Positions 34,542 through 61,356 of a DNA stretch of 64,000 bases are shown here, piece by piece. The DNA is from Octopus bimaculoides (lineage: Eukaryota). The position numbers were made by a program, and so were the translations under genes. The notes beneath the pieces are model-generated. The model was not told the origin of the DNA. It did not search any database and was given only the letters and a program-made list of their open reading frames with translations. Positions within the stretch are counted from its first letter, which is position 1. Each line of letters starts with the position of its first letter. The DNA lies in the NCBI RefSeq assembly GCF_001194135.2, contig NC_068984.1, positions 82,483,527 through 82,547,526 of the forward strand. Direction: 5' to 3'.

Positions 34542-34772
34542 TCAAGGTGGTAAACATTCCATCAAAGTTTGTTTAGCATAAGCACTTAGGCTATCAGGGA
34601 ATTTGACATCAAATTCAACAATTAAGTCCCCTCTGCGCATTGGTTGTTTAGCTAAAGGTAGTCCTTCACCCTGTATTCGTTTCGTTGTTGAAGGTTTGAT
34701 GATTTCTGTGAGACGGAAAGGGATTGTTCGATTACTGATGGTTGGAATTTGAATAGTGGTACCACAAAGAGC
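34542..34772 (-). CDS. DNAJB4: DNAJB coding exon 2 (ALCGTTIQIPTISNRTIPFRLTEIIKPSTTKRIQGEGLPLAKQPMRRGDLIVEFDVKFPDSLSAYAKQTLMECLPP*); absent from the ORF track
   Basis: ttttttAG acceptor, 231 nt phase 0, TGA stop. Carries the GEGLP/RGDL/F.V.FP motifs of Hsp40 CTD II and the dimerisation tail. The SLRE|ALCG junction is the one known from vertebrate DNAJB genes. Total protein 342 aa. Confidence 0.96.
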   Translation of the reverse strand, partial: ALCGTTIQIPTISNRTIPFRLTEIIKPSTTKRIQGEGLPLAKQPMRRGDLIVEFDVKFPDSLSAYAKQTLMECLPP

Positions 34773-34997
34773 CTAAAAAAATTTTTAAAAAGAGTTATTA
34801 GATTATCTCAAAGTAATATTCACAAAAAAATCTAAACATTGGTTTTTAAAAGGTCAACATTTCAAAATTATTCAAAATAAAATGCAACCAAAGAAATAGT
34901 GTGTGTACACACAAATGCACTAAAAGAATGTGTTACAAATCTACATTCCCCAATATTTTTGTGCACTAACATTACCAATACTCACATATGTGTGTGT

Positions 34998-35061
<64 letters not shown>

Positions 35062-35099
35062 AAGAGAGAAAGAGAGAGAGAGAGAGAGAAAGAGAAAGA
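34998..35099. repeat. (GA)n microsatellite with GAAA interruptions
   Basis: Direct inspection. It produces the spurious RERERE ORFs. Confidence 0.95.
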
Positions 35100-35699
35100 A
35101 AAAGTGTATGCAAGCACGCACACACACATTTCTATATGTATACATACACACTGTTTAATATTCACTTTTCTATGCAAGCATGTGTCAGATGGAATTTCCA
35201 ACCAGATGCCCTTTCTGTCACCAACCCTCACCAGTTTCAAAGTAAGATGTATATGAAAAAAAGGCAAGAATGTTAGCACTGAGTAGAATGCCTCACAATA
35301 TGTATTTAAAATTTTGCCAAGGTCAACTTTGCCCTTCAGGGCTGATAAAGTAACAGCCCAGAGCAGAATAATTAGAGCAGGCAGGATGCCATGTATTATC
35401 TGTACCAGCTCTGTGCATCCCAAGTTTAAATCCTGCCTCTTCAACAGGAAAACAGTGACACTTCTGTAAGTTGTGATCAGATAGTATTAAGAATTTGGAA
35501 AACCAAAAGAAATAATTTCCTTTGTTCAGTTGGAAGATGACTGCCACCACCACCACCAAAATTGGGTATAAGGAAACTGCATGAAAACTCATTGGATGAT
35601 TGTACCGGTAATTGCCACATCTGGCCTGTGGGACTTTTCAGCCACTGACACACTACTGTGGTAAATGAATTGCTGAAAATCAGAAATTCTGACCAAGGA

Positions 35700-36140
35700 A
35701 TGTAGCTATGTGGTTAAGAAATTTATTTTCCAACAATATGGTTGGGTTCAGTAACATTGTGTGACACATTGGGCAAGTATCTTAAGCTCCCAAGTCACTG
35801 GCTTTGTGCTCTCAAGGATATGTGAAACACAAGGCCCTTTTTTGAAAAACCATCATCTGAACGTGGCCAATGCCAGTACTCCCCAACTTCCATGTCAGTG
35901 GCATGTAAAAAGCACTATCCGAACCTGATCGATGCCAGGTATGCCCGACTGGCTCCTGAGCTGATGGCACAGAAAAAGCACCCACAACACTCTCGGAGTG
36001 GTTGGCATTAGGAAAAGCATCCAGCTGTAGAAGCATTGCCAGATCAGATTGGAGCCTGGTGCAGCCACTGGCTCCCCAGACCTCAGTCAAACCATCCAAC
36101 CCATGCCAGCATGGAAAACAGATAGTAAACGATGATGATG
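35700..36140 (+). mobile_element. SINE with degenerate tRNA-like head and RTE-associated tail ending gatgatgatg
   Basis: Same tail as 8067-8270 and ~53820-53865. Head related to 42780-42872. Confidence 0.7.
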
Positions 36141-37557
36141 AAATAAGGGTTAGTATGAAAATGAACATAAAAACAATATACATGCACATGCACACACAAG
36201 CATCATCTTGATATCCACTTTTCGATGCTTGCATTAAGAAAGTTGGAATTTGTTGACAGCTTCATTTTTCCTGTCTCTGACCCTCACTTGTTTCCAAGCA
36301 AGGTAAAATGGGCTCATTGCTTAGAAATGAACACAATCACTTAAATGATGCTAATTCTCATTGACAACTATTACATGATGTCAAGACAAAACACACATCT
36401 CTGTGTATGATGAGCGACTTTCAGTTTCTGTCTATCAAATCTACTCAAGGATTTGGCTATATAAAATAACAAAGATACCATGTAGAACTGAACCTGAAAC
36501 TACATGGTTGGAAAGCAAATTTCCATAACTATAGAGCAATACCGATAACTAAAAAGTGATCTTCCCAAGATTTGCACAGAAATTTGAAACAAATACTGCA
36601 TGACATCCTGCCCAATACTAACAATTCTGCCAACTTGTTACCTGTGTGTATGCGCACACACATATACAAGAGGAATTTACTACATCTGTAAAATGAAAGA
36701 GGTGGTAAGCACAAAATGTGATCATAATTCAATAGCAAGCCAATAAGCATCACCATGCTTGTTTGTTGTAGATTGGTTTGTCCATGCTAGAATAGCTTGG
36801 ACGAATACATATTCAGTAATTGTTTTACAGCTGAATGCCTTTTTGTCCACTAATGCTTGCTTACCTGTAGAGGATTTTTTTTATTCTACATATTTGAAAG
36901 TGCAGAGCAAGTGAATGATTTATTGACAATGTCAAACTACATACACGGTGCATGGGACCTTGGGCAAGTGTCTTCTGTTATAGCCCTAGGTTATGGGAAT
37001 AGTTTTGATGAATAGAAACTAAAGAAGCCTGTTGTGCATGTGTGTCCTTGTCTTAACATCACAAAACAAATATGTATGCACGCATACAAGCAGTTCTCGT
37101 TTTCACAGTAATTTATGAGGACACAACTTCACAAGAATTTTTTATTTTTTTACATATGGGGTTGGGGGGAAATGGGATCATTTGAAGTGGGCGTGAAAGC
37201 GAAAGAGACAGAGAGCGCGCGATTGTATGAAGATAGTTCTTTTGAAGTTGGCGTGAAGCAGAAGAATTGATGTGCGTGTGTGTGTGTTTGATGGGGTGTG
37301 CGAGACAAAGTGTGGTGTGTATGTGAATTGCTTTTGTTAGTGTTTGTGAAGAGAGAGTGAGTAATGTTGCTTGTGTGTGTGTATGTGAGAGAGAGAAAGA
37401 AAAAAAGAGATAAATTTTTTTATTCACTTTTTGTAGTGAGTGATTGACAGAGAACAAGAGAGTGAGAGATAGGTTATGTATGTATGTATGAATGAATGAA
37501 TGGCTTCAGTGACACACACGCACGCAGGTTGTTATGTATGTATACATAGATGTGTAT

Positions 37558-37593
<36 letters not shown>

Positions 37594-37718
37594 TCTATAT
37601 ATGTGTGTGTGCGTCACTGAAGCCATACATACATACATACATAACCTCTCGCTCTCTTTTTCTGTCAATCACACTCACACCCCATCAAACACACACACAC
37701 ACACACGAAATATGAATA

Positions 37719-37784
37719 TTCCCATGTCAGGAATGAAACCCTGGTCACCTGGGCGAAAGCCAAGAACCCTGAACACTAAATCGT

Positions 37785-37791
<7 letters not shown>
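37719..37791 (-). pseudogene. tRNA-Glu(TTC)-derived pseudogene or SINE head
   Basis: catgacgatttagtgttcagggttcttggctTTCgcccaggtgaccagggtttcattcctgacatgggaa aligns by eye to eukaryotic tRNA-Glu(TTC). The B box is mutated (GGTTTCATTCC) and the first acceptor-stem bases are replaced by (CA)n. Confidence 0.7.
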
Positions 37792-37829
<38 letters not shown>

Positions 37830-37987
37830 TTGCGTGCGTTGACATTCTATACTCTGTCACCGCTTAGCGCATCGGTGTTGTAATGTTTACTTCCTATATT
37901 GTCCACACAACCGGTTGCTCTTCAAGTCATAAAATGCTACCTCAAATAAGTTCAACCCATGCAAAGAAAAGAACGAGGAGTTTCTTT

Positions 37988-38371
37988 AGAAGCGCACCGC
38001 TCCAAGAAAATTACGCTTACTTGTAAAAAAAAGTTACGAAAATGGGAAATATATCCAAAATAAATGAAGCATGCAAAAAAAANNNNNNNNNNNNNNNNNN
38101 NATAAAATACGGGAAACAGGCACTCGCGAATATAAACAAACATGCCGGACGATAACTTACTTTTACCAGTCATATTATTAATGATACAAGGGGCCCGACA
38201 TGTTTGTTTATATTCGCGAGTGCCCGTTTTCCGTGTTTTATTTTTTAGAATAAAATATTTAAAAATAGATGAATCTAATTTTTTGCATACTTCATTTATT
38301 CTGGATATATTTCCCATTTTCATAATTTTTTTTAGAAATTAGGCCTCATTTTCTTGCAGAGGTGCGCTTCT
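37988..38371. mobile_element. Foldback/MITE-like inverted repeat inside the DNAJB intron
   Basis: Arms 37988-38144 (interrupted by Ns) and 38199-38371. Perfect 25-bp inner stem gcactcgcgaatataaacaaacatg / catgtttgtttatattcgcgagtgc. Confidence 0.75.
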
Positions 38372-40783
38372 TTCGAAGCGCTAAGAACCAATTAATATAT
38401 ATATATATATACACACACACACATACATACAACAAAACCTTCACAAACTAGAACTTCCTAAAGAAGTATTGCTCTTACCAGAATTAGAATCCCTGTATGA
38501 AGGTCAATCTTGCAATATACTGTTTGGTATAATATGTAAAACAAAATCATCATAAACCAACCAACCAAGAATCCCCAAACTCTCAGAAGTAGAATTTCAA
38601 AAGACAACTCAGAACCACGAGAACATAGGATACAAAAGGTTAACAGTCAACAAGCACAACAAACATATATATACATGCATCTGCTGACTAACGGCTACCA
38701 TTATGGTTTCGACATCTGGACAGTACCATTTAATCTGGTAGTGTCAACAGCGTTAAACACTGCTTGAGGATTACTACGAAGCAGCAGCAGCGAAACATTA
38801 GCGCAATATGTCCATTACGTCTACACCTTATCATTACAAATACAAACAACAAATCTTTAACTTAAATCGCAACATATAGCTATGAAGCTCAATCATAGAA
38901 AAGAGAAATATCCTCAATATGGACACTTACATCAAAAAATTATGGTACTGAAAAACAGAGATCATTAAAACAAACCAGCGAATGTACTGAATAAAAGTTA
39001 TTGAACACATTCAGAGATACACGTTGCCGATAGATAAAATGAAAAATAACCAAGGGAATAATCAACTTAGAACTGTAAATCGAAGAACATTAACCAATAA
39101 ACATTGCTATCCTACAATTTATGACACGTATTTAAAACACGAACCAAACGTTAACTAGCGTGTGCATGTATGTATGTATATATCTATTTATCTTTCTATA
39201 CACATACACACATTCATGTGACTAGAAGAAATTTGACAAAATCGTATTTGAACACATTATGCAGACTACATGACGTGAATAAATTGAACAAGAAGAAAGA
39301 TTGATGCCGAGTTCCTTTTAAGATAATTGGCAATAATTTTGTTTTGATGAGGAATATTCGAAACAAGTATTTCCTCTTCCACAGACAGCACATATTCAAA
39401 TCACAAGAAAATGATTCACCAACATATAAACAAATTTTTCACTGAATAGCGTATGTCTTCCTTATCCGTTGGGTTTGGGTTTCGTAAGTTATTACAGAGA
39501 CAGACGTATTACTGTCTACATTCACATATATGGTAGAGCTGTAGTCACTAGCTAACCAGCTGAAAATAACTCTGGTATATATGCTTGCTTAGTAGAGAAA
39601 GGGTGGAGGGGGTTCACTGGGTGTTGCCACCGACTCCGAACACTAGACGAAACATAATTTAGACTTGTAATGTACAATGAATAGCAGACACGCAAAACAA
39701 TTGATGACCTGGACATTTAATTCAATACAAGCACACATTAACGTCGTAGGAGAAAATACACTAGCAAAGCGAGTCAAAGACCAAATAACCCATTTCAAGA
39801 ATTTGCGGTCTATGCCCGAAATCATTCTAACAACCTGTGGAAGCTATGACGGTACGCAGTAGTTCAAGAAGGGATGCAGTTGTCAGCCACGAAATTAGGC
39901 CACCTGATTTTTGAGAGTTGACATGCTGTCAGAATGAGATCAATTGATGTACATCCTTACCTTTCCCTATAATGTTACAGGCATTAAAGTATCTTAAAAT
40001 TACATAAATATATAACAGCCAATGAATCAGAGCTACATATACACACATCTATTCACAAACTGCATGAGTGCCGATATACGTGACATTTGAGAGAAGGCGG
40101 AATGCCGAAATTATCAATCACCCACCATAGTATAGTAGTAGTAACAGCAAAATGGTTTTCTAGAACCATCTTACAACCATCCTTTTTAAGCCCAACAGTT
40201 GTTATAAACGTGTATATAGAGACTTATTACAAGATCAGTATCATTTTATCGACGCAAGAAATATGTAAACTAACGTAGAAAACCAACAGTATTTAGTCCG
40301 ACACCGAGCATTCCTATAGACAAGCGTCGTAAATTATCTAGTGCTCTATAAACCGTAATTAGTTCGGATGTGTATGTTACAAATAAACATCGTAACTACG
40401 ATTCTACAAAGAATTTTAATTTTCTTCCATGGAGGTAGATTTTTGCTCTTCCACCCTTTATGATTATACAGTGCCCCATCTTTTCTTTTTGGGTTGTGTT
40501 TTTTTAACAAAGACTATTCTAATTCTTCAAAAAATATGCGTCGCATAAATCTGAAAAAAAAAAAAAAAAGAATTCGAAAACCAACACTGGGTGGGGAACA
40601 GAAATCTACCTCCCCCACTTTTTTCCTCAGTACCGTTATTTCCGATGCTTGAAACTAGCATCTAAAGAAATCACAGCTTTTGCACTAATAGTCCACTTAC
40701 GACGCTATTCCATAGAAATACCCAGCAAGGTTTCCCAGAACACTAAAACAAAAGAAAAAAAGTTAACATTTCTCTACGATCTA

Positions 40784-41319
40784 NNNNNNNNNNNNNNNNN
40801 NNNNNNNNNNNNNNNNNNNNNNNNNNNNNNNNNNNNNNNNNNNNNNNNNNNNNNNNNNNNNNNNNNNNNNNNNNNNNNNNNNNNNNNNNNNNNNNNNNNN
40901 NNNNNNNNNNNNNNNNNNNNNNNNNNNNNNNNNNNNNNNNNNNNNNNNNNNNNNNNNNNNNNNNNNNNNNNNNNNNNNNNNNNNNNNNNNNNNNNNNNNN
41001 NNNNNNNNNNNNNNNNNNNNNNNNNNNNNNNNNNNNNNNNNNNNNNNNNNNNNNNNNNNNNNNNNNNNNNNNNNNNNNNNNNNNNNNNNNNNNNNNNNNN
41101 NNNNNNNNNNNNNNNNNNNNNNNNNNNNNNNNNNNNNNNNNNNNNNNNNNNNNNNNNNNNNNNNNNNNNNNNNNNNNNNNNNNNNNNNNNNNNNNNNNNN
41201 NNNNNNNNNNNNNNNNNNNNNNNNNNNNNNNNNNNNNNNNNNNNNNNNNNNNNNNNNNNNNNNNNNNNNNNNNNNNNNNNNNNNNNNNNNNNNNNNNNNN
41301 NNNNNNNNNNNNNNNNNNN
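40784..41319. other. Assembly gap (536 N); other gaps at 7113-7122, 10292-10307, 38083-38101, 42576-42585 and 63231-63330
   Basis: Runs of N. The 100-N gap is probably a placeholder of unknown size. Confidence 0.99.
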
Positions 41320-42289
41320 ATATATATATATATATATATATATACGAGACAGGAAGAAAGGACTATTAAGATATTTACAGAATGTTATCTTTTCACTTAT
41401 GTAAGGATCGTTACTTCGGCCAGTTTTCAACCATGAATTAACATAAGTATTTATGTACACACATTGCATTAGAAATATATTTGTGGGACATACTCGTGAC
41501 TATGAAGAAACAAATATTTAATAAAAAGATTTTAAGACAATATAATTTAGGACAAAAAAAATGACCGACAGATTCTATATCGAGAATGAATAAGCACTTA
41601 GAAAGCAAGGCATACAAGAAAAATGTAGTGGCCCTGCTTCCATTTACCAGTAATGGTTACGAACAGAGGTTCGAGAGTGGGGGCACTTCCTTTCCAGACA
41701 ACCATGAAGTAGAAGTGTCTGAAGTAGGAGTTTTCATTCAAAATTAAAACTGAATGATAGATGGTGGATAACAGAGTGCCGGTCTCGACATGCTAGAAAC
41801 AGCAGTCAAATCTTTTCAAAATCACATCTTGCCATCTTAAAAACAGACAGGACAATGCAGACCTATCTAGGTTTCACTTTTCTTGAGATTTTACCTCCGT
41901 AATTTATAAGCTTCCACGTTCTATTCATGAAAAATATTCTGTAATTTTTTAAGTCCTTCATAGCTTTGCTGTTCGATAATATAAAAATTACTTCAATTTG
42001 GATGCAAGCAGTCATCCAAAAATTTTCTGCATTTATTAAAAATTCTCATTGAGCATTATTACTATTGCCATCAGTCATTTGTACTCGCGAAACTGAAAAG
42101 GGTACGTTATACTCCAAGATTGCGCAATATAATCCTAAATACATAACGTCTGCATAACTAATTGGTCACAATGGGACTGCATTGGAAACAGGTCAGCTAA
42201 AAATAAAAAAAAACTTTAAAGACTTAAAATAGGGCGATCCTATTGTTTATTTATTATTATTATTTTTTTTGCCTAAGGACAAAGTTTCG

Positions 42290-42485
42290 GATATTACTCT
42301 TTTACTTGTTTCAGTCATTTGACTGCGGCCATGCTGGAGCACCGCCTTTAGTCGAGCAAATCGACCCCCAGGACTTATTCTTTGGAAGCCTAGTACTTAT
42401 TCTATCGGTCTCTTTTTGCCGAACCGCTAAGTTACGGGGACGTAAACACACCAACATCGGTTGTCAAGCGATGTTGGGGGGACAA

Positions 42486-42518
<33 letters not shown>

Positions 42519-42872
42519 ACGGGCTTTTCAGTTTCCATCTACCAAATCCATTCACAAGGCTTTGGTCGGCCCGAGNNNNNNNNNNGCCTAGTACTTATTC
42601 TATCGGTCTCTTTTTGCCGAACCGCTAAGTTACGGGGACGTAAACACACCAACATCGGTTGTCAAGCGATGTTGGGGGGACAAACACATACATATATATA
42701 TATATATATATACGACGGGCTTTTCAGTTTCCATCTACCAAATCCATTCACAAGGCTTTGGTCGGCCCGAGGCTATGGTAGAAGACACTTGCCCAAGGTG
42801 CCACGCAGTGGGACTGAACCCAGAACCATGTGGTTGGTAAGCAAGCTATTTACCACACAGCCACACCTGCTA
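42290..42872 (-). mobile_element. tRNA-derived SINE, little diverged, with internal (AT)n; partly duplicated across an N gap
   Basis: Head ggtgtggctgtgtggtaaatagcttgct...ggttctgggttcagtcccactgcgtggcaccttgggcaagtgtcttc (A/B-box-like). Decayed relatives at ~8560-8680, 33660-33770, 36360-36520, 36940-37060, 53010-53130 and 61505-61600. Confidence 0.85.
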
Positions 42873-42927
42873 TAATAATAATAAGTAATAATAATTTTAA
42901 AAAAAGACGAACTCTTGACTGACTCAC

Positions 42928-43725
42928 CTCTCTCAATGATATTTTTGCTTTATATCGTATATCATTTCCATCACGCGTGAAGACAGGATGCCGTTTGTCC
43001 CTGATGACAAACACAACATCTGCTGGTATATTATAAGGGGTCTGATCTCCTTCTTTTGGAAAAGTGATCTTCGTACCGGCTTTCCAACCGGGTTTGATAT
43101 CTACTGTTAAGATTTTCTCTTCTCTGACTTGTTTATTCGACTGGACCATTATCGTTCGTGTGATTTTCATTTTCTTCGTGCAACCCGTGCAGATATCCTC
43201 AAGACTGACAGGTAGATCCTTGACAATCGGTTTGTCTTGTTCCTTCTGTCGCCGGAACGACGGTCCACCCATATTAAAACCATGTCTACCGAAGTGCGAG
43301 AATGGCTCATCCACATCCATATCATCGCCAACAAAGCCGCCAGATTGGTGCTGCGATCTTTGATCACCTGGGAATGAACTAAACATGAACGAATTGAACG
43401 GGCCTTCATCCCCGAAAAACATCCTGAACGTTTCGTGCGGGTCACAGTGGAATGAGTAAGAGAAGTTTGCACCTTGTTCCCCACCCATACCACCGGGAAC
43501 ATTGCCCCTAAGTCCTTCTTCTCCATAAGAATCGAATACTTTCCTTTTTTCTTTGTCGGACAGGATTTCATATGCTTCGGCTACCTCTTTGAACTTTTCT
43601 TCGGCTCCAGGAGATTTGTTTTTGTCCGGATGGTATTTCAGAGCCATTTTCCGATAGGCTTTCCTGATGTCATCTTCCGTTGCATTTTTACTTATACCTA
43701 AGATTTTGTAATAATCTTTCCCCAT
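42928..43725 (-). CDS. DNAJB4: DnaJ/Hsp40 class B (DNAJB1/4/5-type) coding exon 1: J domain, G/F-rich region and C-terminal domain I, 266 aa
   Basis: [10 protein letters not shown]...KYHPDKNK...[14 protein letters not shown] (HPD motif); ...[14 protein letters not shown]...KAKISLRE followed by a GTgagt donor. The supplied ORF tail VSQSRV... is intron. The symbol is a best fit within the B1/B4/B5 group. Confidence 0.96.
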
Positions 43726-43892
43726 CGTTTATATTTTGCGTTTTAAATCAATTTTTAAAACAAAATTCTATCAAGCCTTCTATTTATAAAAGAAAAAGGG
43801 AGTAATGGGACTGACTGTTTTTTTCTCTCAATGTGTATAAATATATATGCAACAATTAAAGTATATTAAAAAAAAAATCCTAAATTGTTTAC

Positions 43893-43965
43893 CTAGAATA
43901 GTTAAAAAGTGAAAGCTTCACAATCCAATTACACGACATAACATCGTAAAATGGCGGCGTGAAAG
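43893..43965 (-). other. DNAJB4: Predicted non-coding first exon of DNAJB, with a 113-nt 5'-UTR intron (43780-43892)
   Basis: Minus-strand ctag|GTaaac donor and pyrimidine-rich ...tttataaatAG acceptor 54 nt before the ATG. Start inferred ~30 nt downstream of the TATA box. YY1-like AAAATGGCGG at 43948-43957. Confidence 0.5.
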
Positions 43966-43985
43966 TGTGTAGTCAGACGCCGAGG

Positions 43986-43999
43986 CTATTTATAAATAG
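43986..43999 (-). promoter_or_regulatory. TATA box of DNAJB (perfect palindrome CTATTTATAAATAG)
   Basis: TATAAATA on the minus strand, 14 nt downstream of the HSE and about 270 nt upstream of the ATG. Confidence 0.75.
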
Positions 44000-44012
44000 T
44001 CTGTGACGTGTA

Positions 44013-44042
44013 CTTCTAGAACATTCGAGAACCATCTAGAAA
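44013..44042. promoter_or_regulatory. Heat-shock element, six contiguous alternating pentamers (five perfect)
   Basis: cTTCt-aGAAc-aTTCg-aGAAc-cATCt-aGAAa directly upstream of the TATA box of an Hsp40 gene. Fits the HSF nGAAn inverted-array consensus. Confidence 0.92.
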
Positions 44043-44043
44043 G

Positions 44044-44065
44044 CCAATCAGAACACGCCACGTCA
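44044..44065 (+). promoter_or_regulatory. ERSE (CCAAT-N9-CCACG) overlapping a UPRE-type motif (CCACGTCA, reverse complement TGACGTGG)
   Basis: CCAAT 44044-44048, 9-nt spacer cagaacacg, CCACG 44058-44062, continuing TCA. A second TGACGTG lies at 44004-44010. Motif match is exact; function is not shown. Confidence 0.6.
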
Positions 44066-44378
44066 CAGGTGATGTTTTTGTTATTTTATTACGACAGTAG
44101 AAACAAAAAACAATGACAGATAACCTCCCTTTAATTAAGTTTAAATGCTGAACAGAAAAGCGGTAATTAGCAGCAAAACTGGTTAATTATCATGTTAATA
44201 GTTTCTTATACAAAGGTTGGAAATATCAGATCTAGTGGTGGTGTCGGAAGACATTGCGAGTGGAAAAGAATGAAAATGATTACTGAAAAAATTGCCGGTT
44301 CGTCACAAACGGATAAAATATGAATTATAACACAACCAACGAATAATATTTCTTTTAACAAGGTATAAAGCATCCTGT

Positions 44379-44940
44379 GTATCATACTTAAGGTGGGTAT
44401 ACTGTAGAAAGCCACATAACTGTGGTATTCGTCTCGAGAAAGCATCTTGTACAGACATATTGTGCTAAAAAAAAAAACAAGCACAGAAGAACATCAGTAG
44501 CAGACGAAAAGCGTCCAGCAGTGACGGTGGAATGGCTAATCTAGATTTCCGGGTATTTGAACGTTATCAATAGCAAGCATTCACTAGCAACCGCATGCTT
44601 AGACAAATTTAGCTTCTACTGACAGACAAAAACAGTAATTAACAAATCATTAACATCAACGAATTTTTACCAAGCCTTGCTGGCTATTGGTGACACAAAT
44701 GATTTGTTAATCTCTGTTTTTGTATAGCAGCAGAAGCTAACTTTGTCTAAGCCTGCGGTTGCTGCTGGTGGCGTGCAAATACGCAGAAATCTAGATTTAG
44801 CAATTCTACCACTATTGCTGGGCGCTTTTCGTCTGCTACTGATGTTTTTCTGTGGTTTTTAGCACTATACGAGACTCTTTCTCGGGGCGAATAATGCAGT
44901 TATGTGATTGTTTACAGTTTATCTACCTTGAGTAAGATAG
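44379..44940. repeat. Long imperfect inverted repeat (arms ~44379-44651 and ~44698-44940)
   Basis: About 85% identity by hand count over an 83-nt core, including a perfect 24-bp stem (44490-44513 / 44823-44846). The spacer can also pair (accaa/ttggt, agcc/ggct). No TSD or known TIR recognised. Confidence 0.9.
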
Positions 44941-45999
44941 ACTGCAATTTTTAACCAATACTGTTTCCGTCACTGATGACGAATTTTTTGACAAAAAGTT
45001 TCAGATTCAACAGTTATGACAACGAATCAACCCATTTTATTCTATAAAACAAAACCGGATCGCAAACTTTGTTTGTAGGATGTTCCCAACAGGACCCGAC
45101 TTAATTATATTTGTTTGCCAAATATTTCATTTTGTGATATTTTATGCCTTTTCCTGCAGAGGTATTAGCGAAACTAACTGGCTGCTAATGCGAATCGAAT
45201 ACCTCTTTCTTGACTCGGATAGCAAGGCGTTTACTTTCACTCTACAGCAATTGCTGTCACTATTAGTGATAACAGTAGGGTCCTTTACATGATTGCTCGA
45301 CTTGCTACAAATTGTAGCTAATACATCTCCGCAGCGAACCAATAGTTTTCACATTTCTACTATTTATAATCATCTAATCTAAGCTGTATAATTTTTCATG
45401 GTTCAAGGCCAAATGTAAAGATACCTTTGACCAAGAAATCCAATGGTTTAAAGAAGTTTACTGTCTGGTTTTCTTCAGGTTAAGTGTTGAAATTGGAAAT
45501 ATATGTTTGATGTCCCGTCATGTACATACCGAAAGCTACCGTTTTTATCCGGGCTAGGCAAATCCGTTGCATCTATTTTTTCCCTTGAAAGTTTCTTTAC
45601 TAACAAGAAGAATCAAATAGAAGCTTGCCCGTGAAATACGAGTGTTGAATGCACTGGTGAGCCCTTACTCTGATGTTGCTGTGGAACCAACAGCACTGTT
45701 AAGTTCACCTTGAAGGACAGGGAGTTTAAGGAAGCAAATGCGTACGAAAGAAATTACATCTGCGATTAGAAAATCAGAGAGGCTCGGACGTTTCATGCGT
45801 GCAATTGAAGTTTGTAACAATGCGGTATTGTAGTAATGTTCATAGAAGATGAAGCAGGATCAACAATTAGATTACTGACACTAGATAATTAACCTCGACT
45901 ATATTAGCTGTTAACTCAGTTATTTGTTTTACATTGTCTGTTTTTTAGTAGATGCAGAAATAGCTGGTTTCTATTCGGGTGACAATTTAAAATAAGATT

Positions 46000-46033
<34 letters not shown>

Positions 46034-46969
46034 CGTGTAACCAATGAATAAATTCAAATATCAAAATGATGTAGAAAATAAAAATAAAAGCAAATAATTA
46101 AATCTTTCAGCAATTTAACAAATTAATTTTTCAAATATAAATAATGTCCCATACTTAGTCATTCATACTAGTCCGATGAAGGAAGGACTTGTACGAACAT
46201 AATAATGGTCACAAAAATTTCAGTGCCTGATCCTTGAAAAAGAATTGATATTGCAATATTTTCTTCCTTTTGTAAGAGAAAGGGCATGTTAAATACAACG
46301 CGACAGATGAAAAAGAACCGATACAAAGCCTTTCAAAATGTGAATCAGCTCAAGCATGTGCTAAAAGAGGCAATCAATTGCATTTTTCCTGTACTTGGTA
46401 GATATAAATAACGAGTCACTGTAGTACAAATATAAAGCTATTCTCATGAAAAGGAATGATAAATGTACTCAATGAGAGAAATATACGTTTGTATGTGTAA
46501 GTTGTTATAGTCCGTCTGACGAAGAGAATTCACTCATGGTTCCATTCGTCGCAGTTGTGCTGTCAGCAACTGATCCGTTTTTAACTGCATGGCACAATGT
46601 ATTTGACTGGGAAAATTTTGACACCACTTGGCAGTGTCTCTAACTAATGTCACGGCAAAATAAGCTAACTAAAGAGGACAGTCACATGACTATCGGGTGT
46701 ATATCTCGTTGAACAGACGAAACATTGTGACTTTGGTACTGCGTGCACACACATATTTATAAATACGCGCAAGTACGAAACACCCTACAAGGTGAGGATA
46801 TTGCGATGTTTGTATGAAGTAGTTGAATTTTTATTTTCATATATAACATATAAACATGTACATCTTTTAGAAATTGTCAATTTATAAAATTTTGCTGATT
46901 TTAAATTAACATAAACATTTACTTACACGAAAGAAAATTTCCAGAGAACTTTCATCTAATTCTTCCAAA

Positions 46970-48458: not shown

Positions 48459-50070
48459 TTAAACTGTTGAAAACATGAATAGAAGCCTCGTATGAGTAAA
48501 TAATGTCCTTGAGCATTTATGGTAGAATAATAACCGAATAGTTTCAAGCCAGATATCACAAATTTCTTCATTTGTTGCTTGGCCATAATTCACATCAGAG
48601 CTAATTTCATTTACTTGTATCTCATCTTCTTCTTCAATTTTGTCATTATGTGCATCTGGCACATTTACCTCAAGGCCAGACAAAACATCCTGTAAGCGAG
48701 AGTTTAAGAGGCTAGGTTCTACAGTCTGTCCATGAGGAGCAATTCCACAACATTCAAAGGCATGCTTTATAGTTTCTTTATTTAAAGTGGCAACGGCTTG
48801 GGTCACAAAGTTCACTATCACTTGATAAGAAGGTCTTTTGCAATAACCTTTATTTGTAAACTCCTTTTTGTCATTTGAAAACCAATTCTCCCATTCAGTA
48901 CGAAGGGCTTTCTTGAAAGGACCAATAATTGATACATCTAACGGCTGCAAGTAAGATGTTGTTTTAGGAGGTATAAGTTTGAGAATTGTATTCCTACGTT
49001 TGAACACTTCTGTTTTCTTGTGCACTGAGCATTCACACTGAATTTTGAGCATGGAATAGTTGTGCTGTTCTCTGCCCAAACACTTTGTCAGCCCACAGCT
49101 ACATGAGTTCATATGTGATTGATCCCTTGTTGGAGACTGTTAAGTAAATATTCTTTAGGACCTTGATTTTAAGCACGTTTTTTCAATCCTTTAAGGATAA
49201 TCATTGTTTTCAACACCTTTCCTGCAGCATTAACACACAACACAGCAGTAAAACAAGCTTTGGTAGCACCACGGTGGCTAACATCTACATTTGTATTGCC
49301 AACAAAGTCTATGGTTGTTGAACTCAACATGTCAACGTATACAGGTGTTTCATCCATATTATAAATCTGGTCAGCATCCTTATCTGCTGTTAATACTGGA
49401 ATGCTATCTTGATGGTCACTGGCGATTTGTGCCTTTTCTCCGAGTGTTTTATTGTCTGCTTGACCAACATGTGTAATCTTTCTCACAGTCAGTTTATTCC
49501 GTTTCATGAAATTGAAAATCCATTTATCAGAACATCTAAAGCTGTTCATTTCAATTCCGAACCTTTTTACCAATTCAAAAGTATATTCCCGTAAACGGCG
49601 ATAATTTGCAATTATATTGTTTGCACGTTGAACAACAATCCATTGCAAGAGTTCAATCTCTAGATCTCTATGTGCTGGTCTTATACCTCCAACAATTGAT
49701 CTGCGCCTCTTGTCTGACATATTGATTAACTCAGTTACTTTTGTACACCATTCTCTCAATTGTCTTCTATCGATACCAAAGTCTCTTGACGCAGCAGATA
49801 AATTACCAGAATGTTCTTTTACTCGTTTAATAGCACTCAATTTTTCACTAATGGTATATGATTGTTGAACAAATTTTGATATATTTTCTTTCGACTCCAT
49901 TATTGGGAATTAAGATCCTTTGAATTTATCTACAGACGTAGACCAAATGAACTTCTAAATAGAATGCAAACAATAATACTATGTTTCAACTTTTAACCAC
50001 AAATAACCGCCCATCCAAATAAACGTCCGTGGGCGATCTAATGGATGGGCGGATTTTCGGAAAACCCCGG
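48459..50070 (-). mobile_element. pogo/Tigger-family DNA transposon (POGK-like HTH + CENP-B HTH + DDE_1), inactivated, one TIR
   Basis: ORFs 49169..49900 and 48459..49112 carry NMDETP and IPPKTTSYLQPLDV, with a frameshift and stops between them. TA|CCGGGGTTTTCCGAAAAT terminus at 50070 and an 11-bp subterminal inverted pair (50007-50017 / 50042-50052). No second TIR found. Confidence 0.9.
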
Positions 50071-50209: not shown

Positions 50210-51345
50210 TTAATGAGAGCCATGTATCTGGTGCGATCCAGCTAGTGCAGATACATTCGGTTTCAACTTGTTGACTTTTAGCCACAAGTCCCTTCGTTGT
50301 ATCACATCCAATTCAATTCTTTTATGGGAAAGTAAAGTTCCAGTATGACTAAAACCAGATTCAACCAGGTACGAGGAAGGGAAGGCAAGCAAAAGTAATT
50401 TCAGATGTTTCCGCAGATTGGAGTAGGAATTCAATATACTTTGATGTTACCACAAACCTTTGCCATTACGGCAATATCACATTGTGGCGTCATTATCATT
50501 TTGTAATTCTATCAGTTCCTCCCGAACGTCGTCCTCACAATCGACTGCATCAACCTCAAATGGAGTGCTATACCAATTTGGAATATTCAGTGCAATAACA
50601 TCTTCAAATCACTCCATCATGTCATCGTGCAATGATTGTAAATAGTTGCGATATGTAGTTAAATCCTCATCAACCAATTCATCTTTCAAAGAGTCAAGTT
50701 GTAGAAATTGATGGAATGTTAGCCTTATACAGCACCAATTTTTAAATGAAAAGGTAGTGGTAAATGATTTACAATCAATGAGAGTTTTTCTGTTTCCTTG
50801 CAATAACATATACGAATCATTTAATTTTGGAAATATATCACAAAGAAAAAAGATATCGCACCTTACAACCATCAATGAAGCGGATAGTGGAGTATCTTCA
50901 TAGAAATATATGATTATATGAAATAGTTCAACAAAGCGTAAAATACAGTTTCCTTTTGACATCCACCACACTTCGGTATGATATAAGAGTTTAGTATAGT
51001 CCTCATCATTTCCCAGACAGAGTTGACGGAAAATTCGATCAGACAAAGGACTGGACTTCAATTTGTTCACAGTCTTGATAACTAACTGTAGCGCATCATT
51101 CAATCTACCATTCATATTGTTTGCCATTAAATGCTGCTGGTATGCCAAGCAATGAACAGTTAGTATCTGGTGGGAAATTTCACACTTTAGGAGAGATGAA
51201 AAACCTCTGTATCTTCCTATTATTGAAGGGGCCCCATCAGATGCACAGGCAAGAATATTACTGAGTGGGATATTATGTTCAAAAAGGATAGACTTGAGAG
51301 TGTGAAAAATAGTTGCGCCTTTTGAATCAATGTATTTGATATCTA
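50210..51345 (-). mobile_element. hAT (Buster/Charlie-like) transposase fragment, degenerate
   Basis: ILACASDGAPS (catalytic D), TVHCLAYQQHL (CxxH position altered), LLYHTEVWWMSKG, and the dimerisation tail LLLAFPSSYLVESGFS...HQIHGSH. Confidence 0.88.
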
Positions 51346-57356: not shown

Positions 57357-58413
57357 TTGGGCATAACTACAGATGTATATCTCACCAACCTTGTTGCCTC
57401 ATAACTTCCAGAGAAATGGATACTTTTTAACGTCATTTTCAACAAAGACCACTTAGATGCTGTAGATTCAGAGTATATAGGGATTTATGGGAAAGAATTT
57501 TTCTGAGGGGTGGGGAAAGGAGTTTCGGAAAATTCTCACGATCCAACTTTTCTCCCACATAACCTTCAGGAAAATGGTTATCTTTTCATGAAATTTTATA
57601 CAAAAATACCTTTCAAAGAAATTTGTGGAGAAAATTTTTTCCAAGGGAGTGGGGAGAGGAGTTTCGGATTAGGAAGACCAATTAAGTTGGAACTACTACA
57701 TTTTTTTTTATTTCACCACAGCCTTCGAAATTGTTGATATTTTCAGAGGAAAAAGTGTGTGATTTAATGGAGATTTGGCAGTTGTTTCTAGCACATCTCA
57801 GACAACCCTCCTCGCTTTATATGCTTTAAAAAAAAAAAAAATTGTAGAACCTGAGAAGGTCATTGCTGGCATTTATCCACAGTGATAAGTTGGCCAAAAT
57901 CAATCCGGGTGGTATGATGAGAGGGTGGGGGAATTGTAAAAACAAAAAAAAAAAAATTCAAAACTTTTTTTTCATAAAAAGATATTCCCTCACCTATCAT
58001 TTCGAATGGTGTGGTTAAATAAAAAATGGGGGAAAAATTATTATTTAAACGGAGTAGTTCCAACCTATTTGGTCTTCTTGATCCGAAACTCCTCTCCCCA
58101 TTCCCTCGGAAAAAAAATTCCCCACAAATTTCTTTATAATCGTAATCTATACCGTTTGAAAGGTATTTTGTATGAAATTTCACTAACAGATAACCATTTT
58201 CCCTGAAAGTTATGAAGGGAAAAAAATCGGATCGTGTGAATTTTCTTCTCCTCACCCCCTCGGAAAAATTCTTTCCCCATAAATCTCTATATTCGCTGAA
58301 TCTACAGCATCTAAGCGGTATTTGTTGTAAATGTCGTTAAAAACGTATCCATTTTTCTGGACGTTATGAGGCAAAAAAGTTGTGGGGGAGGGACTACACA
58401 TCTAGTTATGCTA
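57357..58413. mobile_element. Large foldback element, or an inverted pair of one repeat (arms ~57357-57733 and ~57998-58413)
   Basis: Colinear reverse-complement blocks such as cttagatgctgtagattcag / ctgaatctacagcatctaag and ggggagaggagtttcggat / atccgaaactcctctcccc. Confidence 0.8.
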
Positions 58414-58927: not shown

Positions 58928-61356
58928 GAAATGGTCGTAGTACAGCGTCAATTAAAAGAGAGAGAGAAAATATCTTCCTCTTACACTAAAGCTTGAAAAA
59001 GTGAAACTGGTACGTTAAACTCGAATAACGTCTAGTCCTAGAAACACAGGCGTGAAAAAATGGCATAAAAAAAAACATTATGGGTCCAGAAGAATGTTCT
59101 CGATCAGAACTGAGCCGGCTCACAAAGCAAAACACGTCTTTTAACAGTGTCAAGCGGTTATTCTTTATACATTTTCTTGTAATTAAAGGCTAAAATTTTG
59201 TTAGGCCGTATTATAAACAACAGGAAGTTAGCCCCTTTCACTTTTCCTCTTCCTCCCCTTCATCCCACTTCAACGGTCTCAAAAAATGGGTCGGTGGTGA
59301 TTAATTTCTGTAGATCATTATGAAAATGCACTTTAATTATAGTAATTAACAGTAAAATATTTTTGCATAAAACAAAACTATTAGAAATAAAAATCTATAA
59401 TCGAAACAATGCTAATATTTTAGTAAACAATTGATGGCAATTAATAATAAACAAAAAGCTGATAGCTAACGCCAGTGAATAATAGATTTTAGAATAAGGT
59501 TAAATATATGTCAATTTCTATCAGTCCTTAGCTTTGCGCAGAGGCGGTACCATGGCCAATGAGGTAAATCCGAGGCGTGGTTATTGCTAGTTGAAAACTA
59601 TTCCCAATACCCCGCGTATAGCATCCTTCGAGGTGCTGTGCGCAATTTTTGCGCACCTCTAAGGAGGTGTAGAAGTCAATATAATAACAGATTGTATTTT
59701 AGCTAGGAAGTCTCAGAGATGACAATTCAGGTAAATCTGTAACGAAGTTGTCGTTTGTTTTAGAATTTGTTTACTTGTGTCCCTACTAATTTACGCATGG
59801 CCGGTTATGCAGTATAACAGAATTGGCTGTTATATCTAGCACATCGAATAACCATACTAAAGGCCTCTCGATTGTAAAAAGTGGAGTGTCATTATTTATT
59901 ACAATCCGGTGGATCAGTACAATACAGATAAATGCATTTCATTAGCTGGTAACACAACCGCATTTTAATTTCGACTTCCAGATTATTGGAATACTGATTA
60001 ATTTGCGTAGATGAAAAGGGTTATACGTCATCTGAAGTGATTTCTGGAACTATGCCAACGTATGCAATCATCATTACTATTATGGATGTTGTGAAGCGAA
60101 GTGATGGTTCCGAACAGAAGTACACCGGTGCATACGTCCGCAGGAGAAATGCTTTTTAATCTTCATCGGGATTTGAATACGGCGTAAGGCTAAATAACGT
60201 AAGGCATATTGTTCGAAGCCTTATCAGTTCCATCATTCACTGCTGGCTTTCTGGACGTGGGTATACTTTACTATAGCGACTGGAAAACAAACGTTTTAAA
60301 ATGGAAAATAAATCACCTGATTCATTTGCGTCTGTGCGAAAACATGTCTTTTATCAAATGTTCGTCATTTATTAAAAGTGTTTCAACCATGACTAGGAAT
60401 TCAAATGTAACCATCTAGTCTTTTGTAAGAGTCTTTCAACAGTGACCTTTCCATCTTTTTTTTTTTATTTTTAAGCCAAATAGGACTAATATTAACGACG
60501 AAATATATGTATTGAAGATAAATGAAGCTGTTATTTCTAGCATGTTGAACAGCAAGAGTACATAAACATTAACACACATAAGTTTACCATTTGAAATTGT
60601 TTTTAGCTCCAGGTCGGTTCTGATCCAGCAACCTCATGATCCAAATACACGACTACACTATCCAATGCGGGAGATTTTGACTATTTTCTGAATTATCACA
60701 ATTGGAACGTAAAAAACATAAATGTAAAAATGTGGAACTCGCTTTACTAAATAATTTATTACTATTAAAGAACATATTCATGCGAAGAAAATGTTTCGGA
60801 AAATGAATATATTATTTAATATTATTAACGATAAATCATTCTTTAAAACAGTTAAATAATGAAATAGATTACCCTTCTTTCCAGGTACGTAGAAGTAACT
60901 GAAAACGAAAAGAAAGTGTGACGCCGAGATTGTATAAAATTAGGCATGGGTATCCCAAAGTGAGCGAAACGAATTTGTAAATACTTGGAAGTAGTTTTAT
61001 TAAGCGTCAGTTTAATAAATTTATATCTCCCTATCTGTCTGACTGTCTGTTTATCTATCTGTCTATTTATCTATCTATAAGCCTATCTACCTACCTATAT
61101 TCTATTTATCCATCTCCATTGTCATGGAACCTCACCCCAAAAAACAAAAACAATGTTCTCTTCTAAACACTCCTCCCCCCCAAAAAAACATCTGTTTTAT
61201 ATAAATGAACAAGCTGTTAGTACATTCACAACATCTTATTTGATAAGTTCGAGAAAAGAACGAAAGCGCTAATAATAATGAAGAAATAAAAAGATTTTTT
61301 TCTAAAATTCTAACGACCTTTCTTCTCAATATTCAATTTTTGTACATCACACCTAC

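What the first reader, a model, noticed from the sequence alone, without database searches (positions are those of the whole stretch)
44379..44940. 560-bp non-TE-like foldback just upstream of the heat-shock promoter: candidate stress-induced hairpin RNA locus
Seen: two ~250-270-nt arms, ~85% identical in the core with a perfect 24-bp stem and a spacer that folds on to a 5-nt loop. The sequence is complex, unlike any other repeat in the window, and has no TSD. By hand count, transition mismatches in the core favour G:U pairs in a + strand RNA (9) over a - strand RNA (5), a weak trend. Established: Drosophila hpRNAs are inverted duplications diced into endo-siRNAs that repress paralogous genes; cephalopods edit dsRNA heavily and in a temperature-dependent way. 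Inference: a divergent HSF/UPR-driven transcript could produce long dsRNA for Dicer or ADAR. This is the best candidate for an undescribed system in the window.
Basis: partly seen in the sequence, partly recalled or inferred. Interest (0 to 1): 0.72.

Follow-up and report, generated by a model that had tools for sequence, protein, structure and literature searches.

The report
Repeat-derived hairpin edited by ADAR
The 590-bp foldback is real, but it is built from a repeat present about 100 times in the genome, and its RNA (made at low level on the minus strand, in the same direction as the neighbouring Hsp40 gene) carries clustered A-to-G changes of the kind ADAR makes, which is ordinary in animals.

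Summary
The foldback exists at 44366-44953: arms 80% alike, a 24-bp perfect stem and a 5-nt loop. DNA contigs from independent samples confirm it, and a related species has it in one contig.

- It is not "non-TE-like". At 80% likeness or more, DNA depth over the arms is about 60-130 times single copy, while the flanks are single copy.
- The RNA is not a transcript divergent from the heat-shock promoter. RNA contigs tile from about 46700 down through the foldback into exon 1 of a minus-strand DNAJB1-type Hsp40 gene. An upstream first exon (46155-~46700) splices GT..AG to the gene's last coding exon (34772), so the foldback lies in that isoform's intron or leader.
- The G:U strand trend is not significant (17 vs 12, p = 0.46) and points to the wrong strand.

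All 19 RNA-DNA differences are T>C on the + strand, which is A>G in minus-strand RNA. They sit on both arms, occur nowhere else, and are enriched at A:C mismatches (p = 0.004). This is ADAR hyper-editing of an intramolecular hairpin.

An hpRNA/siRNA role is unlikely: published work reports that molluscs lack Dicer-2 and siAGO, and the hairpin evolves about neutrally.

Verdict: an ordinary inverted-repeat editing substrate. Interest is low.

The parts
44366..44676 (.). Left arm of the foldback. Its best-conserved segments are 44476-44539 and 44573-44651. It is the arm closer to the genome-wide repeat family.
   Evidence: arm alignment, 80% identity; depth 60-130 times single copy at 44359-44460 and 44563-44664
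44677..44681 (.). 5-nt apical loop (TTGCT) at the centre of symmetry.
   Evidence: loose ends of other family copies continue like the right arm into 44677-44697
44682..44953 (.). Right arm of the foldback.
   Evidence: a 28-nt deletion at 44727-44754 in organism C is not mirrored in the left arm
44490..44513 (.). Longest perfect stem: 24 bp, pairing with 44823-44846.
44417..44924 (-). Span of 19 A-to-G (A-to-I) sites in minus-strand RNA, seen as T>C on the + strand. Positions: 44417, 44522, 44528, 44609, 44610, 44614, 44807, 44813, 44815, 44816, 44826-44829, 44895, 44900, 44901, 44912, 44924.
   Evidence: RNA contigs of four runs from three studies: T>C only; a hyper-edited contig end adds 8 sites; DNA contigs show 0 differences; enrichment at A:C mismatches, p = 0.004
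46155..46709 (-). Upstream alternative first exon of the Hsp40 transcription unit. It is the likely origin of the RNA that carries the hairpin. Its 5' end is approximate (contigs end at 46615-46709).
   Evidence: contigs in 4 runs, 0 differences; held by at least 14 RNA runs, 8 of which also hold the hairpin
34773..46154 (-). Intron of the upstream-exon isoform (CT..AC on the + strand, which is GT..AG on the - strand). It contains the foldback, the canonical promoter and exon 1.
   Evidence: the loose end of an X20 contig at 46154 equals window 34743-34771 exactly
44014..44062 (-). Canonical Hsp40 promoter elements: an HSE array at 44014-44041 and an ERSE (CCAAT-N9-CCACG) at 44044-44062. A TATA box lies at 43986-43998.
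   Evidence: RNA coverage starts at about 43958
42928..43958 (-). Exon 1 of the DNAJB1-type Hsp40 gene: ATG at 43725, the J domain, the G/F region and the first part of the C-terminal domain. The donor is GAG|GTGAGT.
34542..34772 (-). Coding part of the last exon of the Hsp40 gene (ALCGTTIQIPT...MECLPP*).

Best explanation
The foldback is two inverted, abutting copies of a fragment about 290 nt long. The fragment comes from an old dispersed repeat with roughly 100 copies per genome, 80-90% alike. The foldback sits 0.4-1 kb upstream of the canonical heat-shock promoter of a DNAJB1-type Hsp40 gene.

It is not a gene of its own. It is transcribed at low level on the minus strand as a passenger of Hsp40-sense RNA that starts further upstream, at a first exon at about 46155-46700. 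That RNA either splices over the region to the last exon or runs unspliced through the foldback and the promoter into exon 1.

In that RNA the two arms fold back on each other into an imperfect duplex of about 270 bp. ADAR deaminates this duplex at many adenosines on both arms, preferring A opposite C.

Shown: the structure, the repeat origin, minus-strand transcription, the continuity of the RNA, the splice junction and the editing pattern.

Inferred: that ADAR is the enzyme; that the upstream exon's promoter is the source of the RNA; and that the hairpin has no dedicated function beyond the generic fate of repeat-derived self-dsRNA (editing, which weakens the duplex as a dsRNA signal).
For: - Structure.
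- Repeat origin: summed contig depth is 7235 against 56.9 single copy in X9, and 1018 against 12.8 in X5. Raw reads give about 62 against about 0.7. Flanks are single copy. There are hundreds of contig pieces at 80-87% identity whose sequence continues beyond the arms' outer ends. The same family is multicopy in three related species.
- Transcription and strand: RNA contigs tile 45900 to 43740 and join exon 1. Every RNA-DNA difference is T>C on the + strand, on both arms, with none outside 44417-44924.
- Hyper-editing: one contig end carries 8 T>C in 30 nt.
- Editing context: edited sites are enriched at A:C mismatches, 6 of 19 against 11 of 160, p = 0.004. Only 1 of 19 has a 5' G, against a 15% background.
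- Upstream exon and GT..AG junction to 34772. Its co-occurrence with the hairpin in RNA runs.
- Literature: hyper-editing clusters in Metazoa lie in dsRNA formed by neighbouring inverted repeats, and octopus has the strongest signal (PMC5625713). Editing primarily targets repeat-derived dsRNA (PMC9989829).
Against: - The older RNA runs are available only as assembled contigs without strand or local depth. The strand rests on the direction of editing, and abundance is poorly known.
- The splice junction was seen in one contig of one run (X20).
- In three deep raw-read runs the upstream exon and the hairpin are almost silent, so expression depends on the sample and the condition is unknown.
- The repeat family could not be named or its ends defined. 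Whether the palindrome arose by local inverted duplication or arrived as a foldback element is open.
- The organism names are coded.
- A function cannot be excluded by sequence alone.
Confidence: 0.8

Rival explanations
1. hpRNA locus. The hairpin would be a dedicated precursor, diced into 21-22-nt endo-siRNAs that silence paralogous genes or copies of the repeat family, and possibly induced by stress.
For: It is a long, stable hairpin that is transcribed. About 100 related copies in the genome could serve as targets.
Against: - No small-RNA data could be examined.
- Dicer-2 and siAGO are reported lost in Mollusca, and no endo-siRNA signature was found in a mollusc small-RNA library (PMC11114477).
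- The arms come from a dispersed repeat and not from a gene.
- The hairpin's substitution rate is about that of its flanks, and there is an uncompensated 28-nt deletion in one arm in organism C.
- RNA level is low.
- Heavy A-to-I editing generally antagonises dicing. This is established knowledge and was not tested here.
Confidence: 0.04
2. A single foldback or MITE-type transposon inserted as one unit. On this view the palindrome is the element's own long terminal inverted repeats, not a local inverted duplication or two separate insertions. This concerns origin only, and is compatible with the ADAR-substrate behaviour.
For: - It is a multicopy family.
- The palindrome is almost spacer-less.
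- A direct repeat TTTTAAC/TTAA lies 8-11 nt outside the alignable arms on both sides.
- Palindromic repeats that are heavily edited on their own are known, for example the frog Harbinger-derived repeat (PMC5625713).
Against: - Other copies continue past the outer arm ends with a shared sequence that is absent here (loose-end consensus before 44369/44375). The arm ends are therefore not the family's termini.
- No TSD directly abuts the arms.
- Other copies were seen only as colinear single-arm matches, and the inner right arm and centre (44665-44766) are nearly single copy.
- The arms are about as diverged from each other (80%) as from other family members (80-87%).
Confidence: 0.2
3. A regulatory RNA structure for the Hsp40 gene. 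The hairpin, in upstream-initiated sense RNA that crosses the HSE promoter, would act as a temperature- or ADAR-sensitive switch. Possible modes are nuclear retention, choice between the exon-1-skipping and read-through isoforms, or transcriptional interference with the heat-shock promoter.
For: - Position: the hairpin-bearing RNA runs through the HSE/TATA promoter and either joins exon 1 or splices past it.
- The foldback is present at the orthologous site in organism C, and its right arm with flank in organisms B and D.
- Upstream-exon expression varies between samples.
Against: - The related species are only about 3-4% diverged, so presence says little.
- Changes in the hairpin accumulate at about the flank rate, with uncompensated indels.
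- Similar foldbacks are common nearby.
- No condition-linked data were available.
Confidence: 0.05
4. Assembly artefact: a false palindrome created by the assembler.
For: Palindromes are a known artefact of some library types. This is general knowledge.
Against: - Independent Illumina DNA runs from different samples and studies hold 94% of its 31-mers.
- Zero-difference contigs overlap across the centre.
- A related species has it in one contig.
- RNA contigs also cross the centre, at 44395-44716 and 43740-44733.
Confidence: 0.01

Closest known systems
Inverted-repeat Alu (IRAlu) and other inverted-TE dsRNA editing clusters in animal pre-mRNAs and UTRs
   Same: - Two inverted copies of a dispersed repeat sit within one Pol II transcript.
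- They form an intramolecular duplex a few hundred bp long.
- It carries clustered, strand-consistent A-to-G changes on both arms, with a preference for A:C mismatches.
- Expression is low and passenger-like, in intron or leader sequence.
- This is the class described as dominant for hyper-editing in Metazoa, octopus included (PMC5625713, PMC9989829).
   Different: - The repeat family is different and unnamed, with only about 100 copies.
- The arms abut as a near spacer-less palindrome, whereas IRAlu pairs are two separate insertions.
- The site lies upstream of the host gene's main promoter, and is reached only by an upstream-initiated isoform.
Drosophila hpRNA loci (endo-siRNA-generating hairpins)
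   Same: A long inverted duplication transcribed into a hairpin RNA.
   Different: - There is no evidence for small RNAs.
- The lineage is reported to lack Dicer-2 and siAGO (PMC11114477).
- The arms come from a repeat and not from a target gene.
- Evolution is about neutral.
- The RNA is ADAR-edited.
MITEs and foldback transposons, including the palindromic Harbinger-derived repeat of Xenopus that is hyper-edited on its own
   Same: A multicopy, non-coding, palindromic unit under 1 kb that forms dsRNA without needing a second insertion.
   Different: - No TSD or defined termini were found.
- Other copies extend beyond the arm ends.
- Other copies were not seen to be palindromic.

Membership tests
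ADAR-edited inverted-repeat dsRNA (hyper-editing cluster) | Inverted repeat able to form a long duplex (about 100 bp or more) | tested here: met
   277 aligned columns at 80% identity. MFE of the minus-strand RNA is -271.5 kcal/mol, z -17.6.
ADAR-edited inverted-repeat dsRNA (hyper-editing cluster) | Both arms present in the same RNA molecule | tested here: met
   RNA contigs cross the centre (44395-44716; 43740-44733), and edits on both arms have the same sense.
ADAR-edited inverted-repeat dsRNA (hyper-editing cluster) | Clustered mismatches of a single type (A>G in the sense of the transcript), confined to the duplex | tested here: met
   19 of 19 are T>C on the + strand, all within 44417-44924. 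There are 0 differences in the flanking RNA contigs.
ADAR-edited inverted-repeat dsRNA (hyper-editing cluster) | Changes absent from genomic DNA | tested here: met
   DNA contigs of X5 and X9 show 0 differences over 44494-45400. They are not from the same individuals as the RNA.
ADAR-edited inverted-repeat dsRNA (hyper-editing cluster) | ADAR neighbour and opposite-base preferences (5' G depleted; A opposite C favoured) | tested here: met
   A:C mismatch enrichment has odds ratio 6.3, p = 0.004. A 5' G occurs at 1 of 19 sites against a 15% background, which is the right direction but not significant on its own.
ADAR-edited inverted-repeat dsRNA (hyper-editing cluster) | Dependence on ADAR enzyme | not testable with these tools
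   This needs a knock-down or an in vitro assay.
hpRNA / endo-siRNA locus | Discrete 21-22-nt, Dicer-2-dependent, phased small RNAs from both arms | not testable with these tools
   The run index works on 31-mers, and no small-RNA reads could be laid.
hpRNA / endo-siRNA locus | Arms homologous to a protein-coding target gene | tested here: not met
   The arms match about 100 dispersed non-coding copies. I found no coding potential or Pfam-bearing ORF in the arms.
hpRNA / endo-siRNA locus | Dedicated siRNA machinery (Dicer-2, siAGO) in the lineage | not tested
   The literature reports its loss in Mollusca (PMC11114477). The organism's identity is coded here.
MITE / foldback transposon | Many dispersed copies | tested here: met
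   About 80-130 copy equivalents at 80% likeness or more.
MITE / foldback transposon | Target-site duplication directly flanking terminal inverted repeats | tested here: not met
   No direct repeat abuts the arms. A TTTTAAC/TTAA repeat lies 8-11 nt outside them and could be chance.
MITE / foldback transposon | Copies share the same termini and palindromic layout | tested here: not met
   Other copies run on past 44369/44375 with a common sequence absent here. The centre and inner right arm are near single copy.

The most novel reading that the evidence does not exclude
The edited hairpin could be part of a control module for the Hsp40 gene. An upstream promoter at about 46.7 kb sends sense transcription through the hairpin and across the HSE/TATA promoter. 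This yields either a long-leader RNA or a non-productive isoform that splices past the J-domain exon. The temperature-sensitive stability or editing of the hairpin would set the balance between these forms. It would be a cephalopod RNA thermosensor or ADAR switch acting on a chaperone gene.
Probability: 0.04. Interest if true: 0.6.

Novelty: new member of a known kind. Interest (0 to 1): 0.2.

Why it matters
As found, the locus is one more example of the commonest class of ADAR substrate: dsRNA from inverted repeats in non-coding parts of transcripts. Its use is practical. It is a clean, single-locus, 270-bp hairpin that could serve as a reporter of hyper-editing activity, for instance against temperature. 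The side finding may matter more for how this chaperone gene is regulated: an upstream-initiated, exon-1-skipping Hsp40 isoform whose transcription crosses the heat-shock promoter. Neither finding opens a long-standing question.

Tried and rejected
The likely cause is the (TG)13 repeat at 46000-46025, and later stretches avoided it.
- Laying raw RNA reads at 85% likeness mostly captured reads from other family copies or unrelated abundant RNAs, with fixed non-editing differences and loose ends. This was not usable for editing levels, but it first hinted at paralogous copies.
- tRNA and Rfam searches of the arms, looking for a SINE head or a known RNA, gave nothing above threshold. The only hits were generic long-hairpin plant miRNA models at 43-48 bits against gathering scores of 200 or more.
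It is rejected as evidence of strand, and the better + strand MFE (-316.6 vs -271.5) follows from that small imbalance.
- TSD search: nothing abuts the arms.
- The sigma-70/terminator scan does not apply to this eukaryotic promoter.
- A covariation test across species was not possible. Only difference lists were available, not sequences, and the species are just 3-4% apart.
- Metabolic-labelling (4sU) T>C artefacts were considered and rejected. The changes occur in three unrelated studies and only inside the duplex.

Full report
**1. The observation**

The foldback is real. The repeat finder reports three colinear inverted arm pairs between 44366 and 44953, at 73-84% complementarity. A self-BLAST aligns 44377-44942 to itself in reverse. 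A global alignment of the left arm with the reverse complement of the right arm gives 277 columns at 80% identity, with five indels of 3-9 nt.

- The longest perfect stem is 24 bp, 44490-44513 with 44823-44846.
- The centre closes on a 5-nt loop at 44677-44681.
- The + strand RNA folds at -316.6 kcal/mol (z -30) and the - strand at -271.5 (z -17.6).
- No other copy lies in the 64-kb window.

It is not a mis-assembly. DNA runs from several samples and studies hold 94% of its 31-mers. Zero-difference DNA contigs overlap across the centre. A related species carries the whole structure in one contig.

**2. It is repeat-derived**

I laid DNA reads and contigs at 80% likeness or more. The flanks are single copy. 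The arms are not.

| Run | Depth over the arms | Single-copy depth |
|---|---|---|
| X9 (summed contig depth, 44410-44460) | 7235 | 56.9 |
| X5 (summed contig depth) | 1018 | 12.8 |
| X23 (raw reads) | about 62 | about 0.7 expected |

- This amounts to roughly 80-130 copy equivalents for the most repeated segments: 44359-44460, 44563-44664 and 44767-44868.
- Hundreds of contig pieces match at 80-87% identity.
- Many of those pieces continue past the outer arm end (44369/44375) with a shared sequence that this locus lacks. Past the inner end they continue as the right arm does into the 'spacer'.
- The arms are therefore truncated fragments of a longer dispersed element. They meet almost without a spacer.
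- The same family is multicopy in three related species.
- I found no tRNA-like head and no Rfam family, and no TSD abutting the arms.
The strict MITE definition is also not met.
- Two other complex foldbacks lie in the same window. This fits the reported excess of potential long dsRNA in the octopus genome (PMC5625713).

**3. The neighbourhood**

The 'heat-shock promoter' is real. It belongs to a minus-strand class B Hsp40 gene.

- Exon 1 (42928-~43958, ATG at 43725) encodes a J domain and the first part of the DnaJ C-terminal domain.
- Joined at GAG|GTGAGT to 34772, it gives a 342-aa protein. That protein matches DNAJB1 over the J domain (147 bits) and over the C-terminal domain (221 bits).
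- Upstream on the minus strand lie a TATA box (43986-43998), an HSE array (44014-44041) and an ERSE, CCAAT-N9-CCACG (44044-44062).
- Raw RNA reads cover the 5' UTR up to about 43958 and then drop to zero.
- The foldback lies 0.4-1 kb upstream of this start.

**4. Transcription and strand**

At least 11 RNA runs of the same organism hold parts of the foldback.

- In X13, X17, X20 and X25 (three studies), low-depth RNA contigs tile from 45900 through the foldback and are joined to the abundant exon-1 contigs.
- Further upstream, all four runs have a zero-difference contig at 46154-46615/46709. In three of the four, coverage then stops.
- One X20 contig carries, beyond 46154, 29 letters identical to window 34743-34771.
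- Allowing for the one-base ambiguity, this is an intron at 34773-46154. It reads CT..AC on the + strand, which is GT..AG on the minus strand. Its acceptor is exactly the one the coding sequence uses.
- There is therefore an upstream alternative first exon on the minus strand. Its isoform skips exon 1.
- An in-frame TAA precedes the junction, so this isoform is non-productive.
- The foldback lies in that isoform's intron, or in the leader of unspliced read-through RNA.
- The upstream exon is held by at least 14 RNA runs, 8 of which also hold the hairpin.
- In three deep raw-read runs both are nearly silent, while the canonical 5' UTR is covered.
- The hairpin RNA is thus a minor, sample-dependent, Hsp40-sense passenger. 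It is not a divergent HSF-driven transcript.

**5. Editing**

- Every difference between the RNA contigs and the genome is T>C on the + strand. There are 11 such sites, and 8 more in one hyper-edited contig end at 44800-44829.
- The sites lie on both arms, differ between runs, and are absent from the DNA contigs.
- No differences occur in the flanking RNA contigs.
- These are A>G changes in minus-strand RNA, the signature of ADAR acting on an intramolecular hairpin. A sense-antisense duplex would show both A>G and T>C.
- Six of the 19 edited adenosines face a C, against 11 of 160 unedited ones (Fisher p = 0.004). This is ADAR's known preference.
- Only one edited site has a 5' G.
- With these 19 changes the predicted stability rises from -271.5 to -295.9 kcal/mol, because A:C mismatches become I:C-like pairs.
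The 17 positions that would be G:U in a + strand RNA are A:C mismatches in the real minus-strand RNA. The 17 vs 12 split is not significant (p = 0.46).

**6. Evolution**

- Organism C has the whole locus in one contig, with 42 substitutions and 40 gap letters.
- Organisms B and D match the right arm and flank with 33 and 27 differences over about 700-800 nt, which is 3-4% divergence.
- Listed substitutions run at about 2% inside the foldback and 2.6-3.6% in the flanks.
- A 28-nt deletion in the right arm of organism C (44727-44754) has no counterpart in the left arm.
- With species this close, presence is uninformative. There is no sign that pairing is maintained by selection.

**7. Interpretation**

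The best-supported mechanism is generic. Inverted copies of a repeat, carried in a non-coding part of a Pol II transcript, fold into long dsRNA and are hyper-edited by ADAR. This is the dominant class of editing substrate across Metazoa (PMC5625713; PMC9989829).

- The hpRNA/endo-siRNA reading could not be tested directly. It is disfavoured by the reported loss of Dicer-2 and siAGO in Mollusca (PMC11114477), by the repeat origin, and by the near-neutral evolution.
- How the palindrome arose remains open. It could be a local inverted duplication of a repeat fragment, or a foldback element inserted as a unit.
- A regulatory role for the hairpin, or for the promoter-crossing upstream transcript, in Hsp40 control is not excluded. 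It has no positive evidence.

**8. Caveats**

- Most RNA evidence comes from assembled contigs, which carry no strand and no local depth.
- The splice junction rests on one contig.
- No experimental condition (heat or otherwise) is known for any run.

**9. Verdict**

Noticed in passing
46155-46709 (-) joined to 34772 (-); intron 34773-46154: An upstream alternative first exon of the Hsp40 gene splices GT..AG directly to the last coding exon. It skips exon 1 (the ATG and the J domain), and its transcription crosses the HSE/TATA promoter. An in-frame TAA lies just before the junction, so the isoform looks non-productive. It is expressed in at least 14 RNA runs but is almost silent in three deep ones.
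   Followed up: partly
37988-38371 and 57424-58343: Two more complex foldbacks lie in the same window. The first has 93-nt arms at 86% complementarity. The second has nested arms of 79 and 89 nt at 86-88%, spanning about 920 nt. They are unrelated in sequence to the finding. Such structures are common here.
   Followed up: no
59530-59667 (+): A full-length U4 spliceosomal snRNA gene (Rfam RF00015, 118.5 bits, E = 2.4e-26).
   Followed up: no
48459-49900 (-): Remnants of a pogo/Tc5-type DNA transposase lie in two adjacent ORFs (Pfam DDE_1, HTH_Tnp_Tc5 and weak CENP-B_N hits). A further unassigned ORF at 50609-51148 (-) gave no Pfam match.
   Followed up: no
46828-46872: A segment of about 40 nt is shared with very abundant RNA contigs from elsewhere (depth 100-296). 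Those contigs are loose on both sides and carry a fixed A>T at 46848. It is probably a fragment of a highly expressed repeat or transcript.
   Followed up: no
44543-44622 and 44835-44870: Raw RNA reads from other loci match these arm segments at 85-90%, with fixed non-editing differences and common loose ends (for example TATAGAAATCACTGATG... after 44622). Other copies of the repeat family are therefore expressed, some far more strongly than this one.
   Followed up: partly
44004-44065: The promoter module is compact and symmetric. TGACGTG and CACGTCA half-sites bracket an HSE array and a perfect ERSE (CCAAT-N9-CCACG). This suggests combined HSF and ATF6/XBP1-type control of a cytosolic-type Hsp40 gene.
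   Followed up: no
about 40780-41400, and inside 42243-42875: There are assembly gaps (691 N in the window), including a long N run inside the Hsp40 intron.
   Followed up: no
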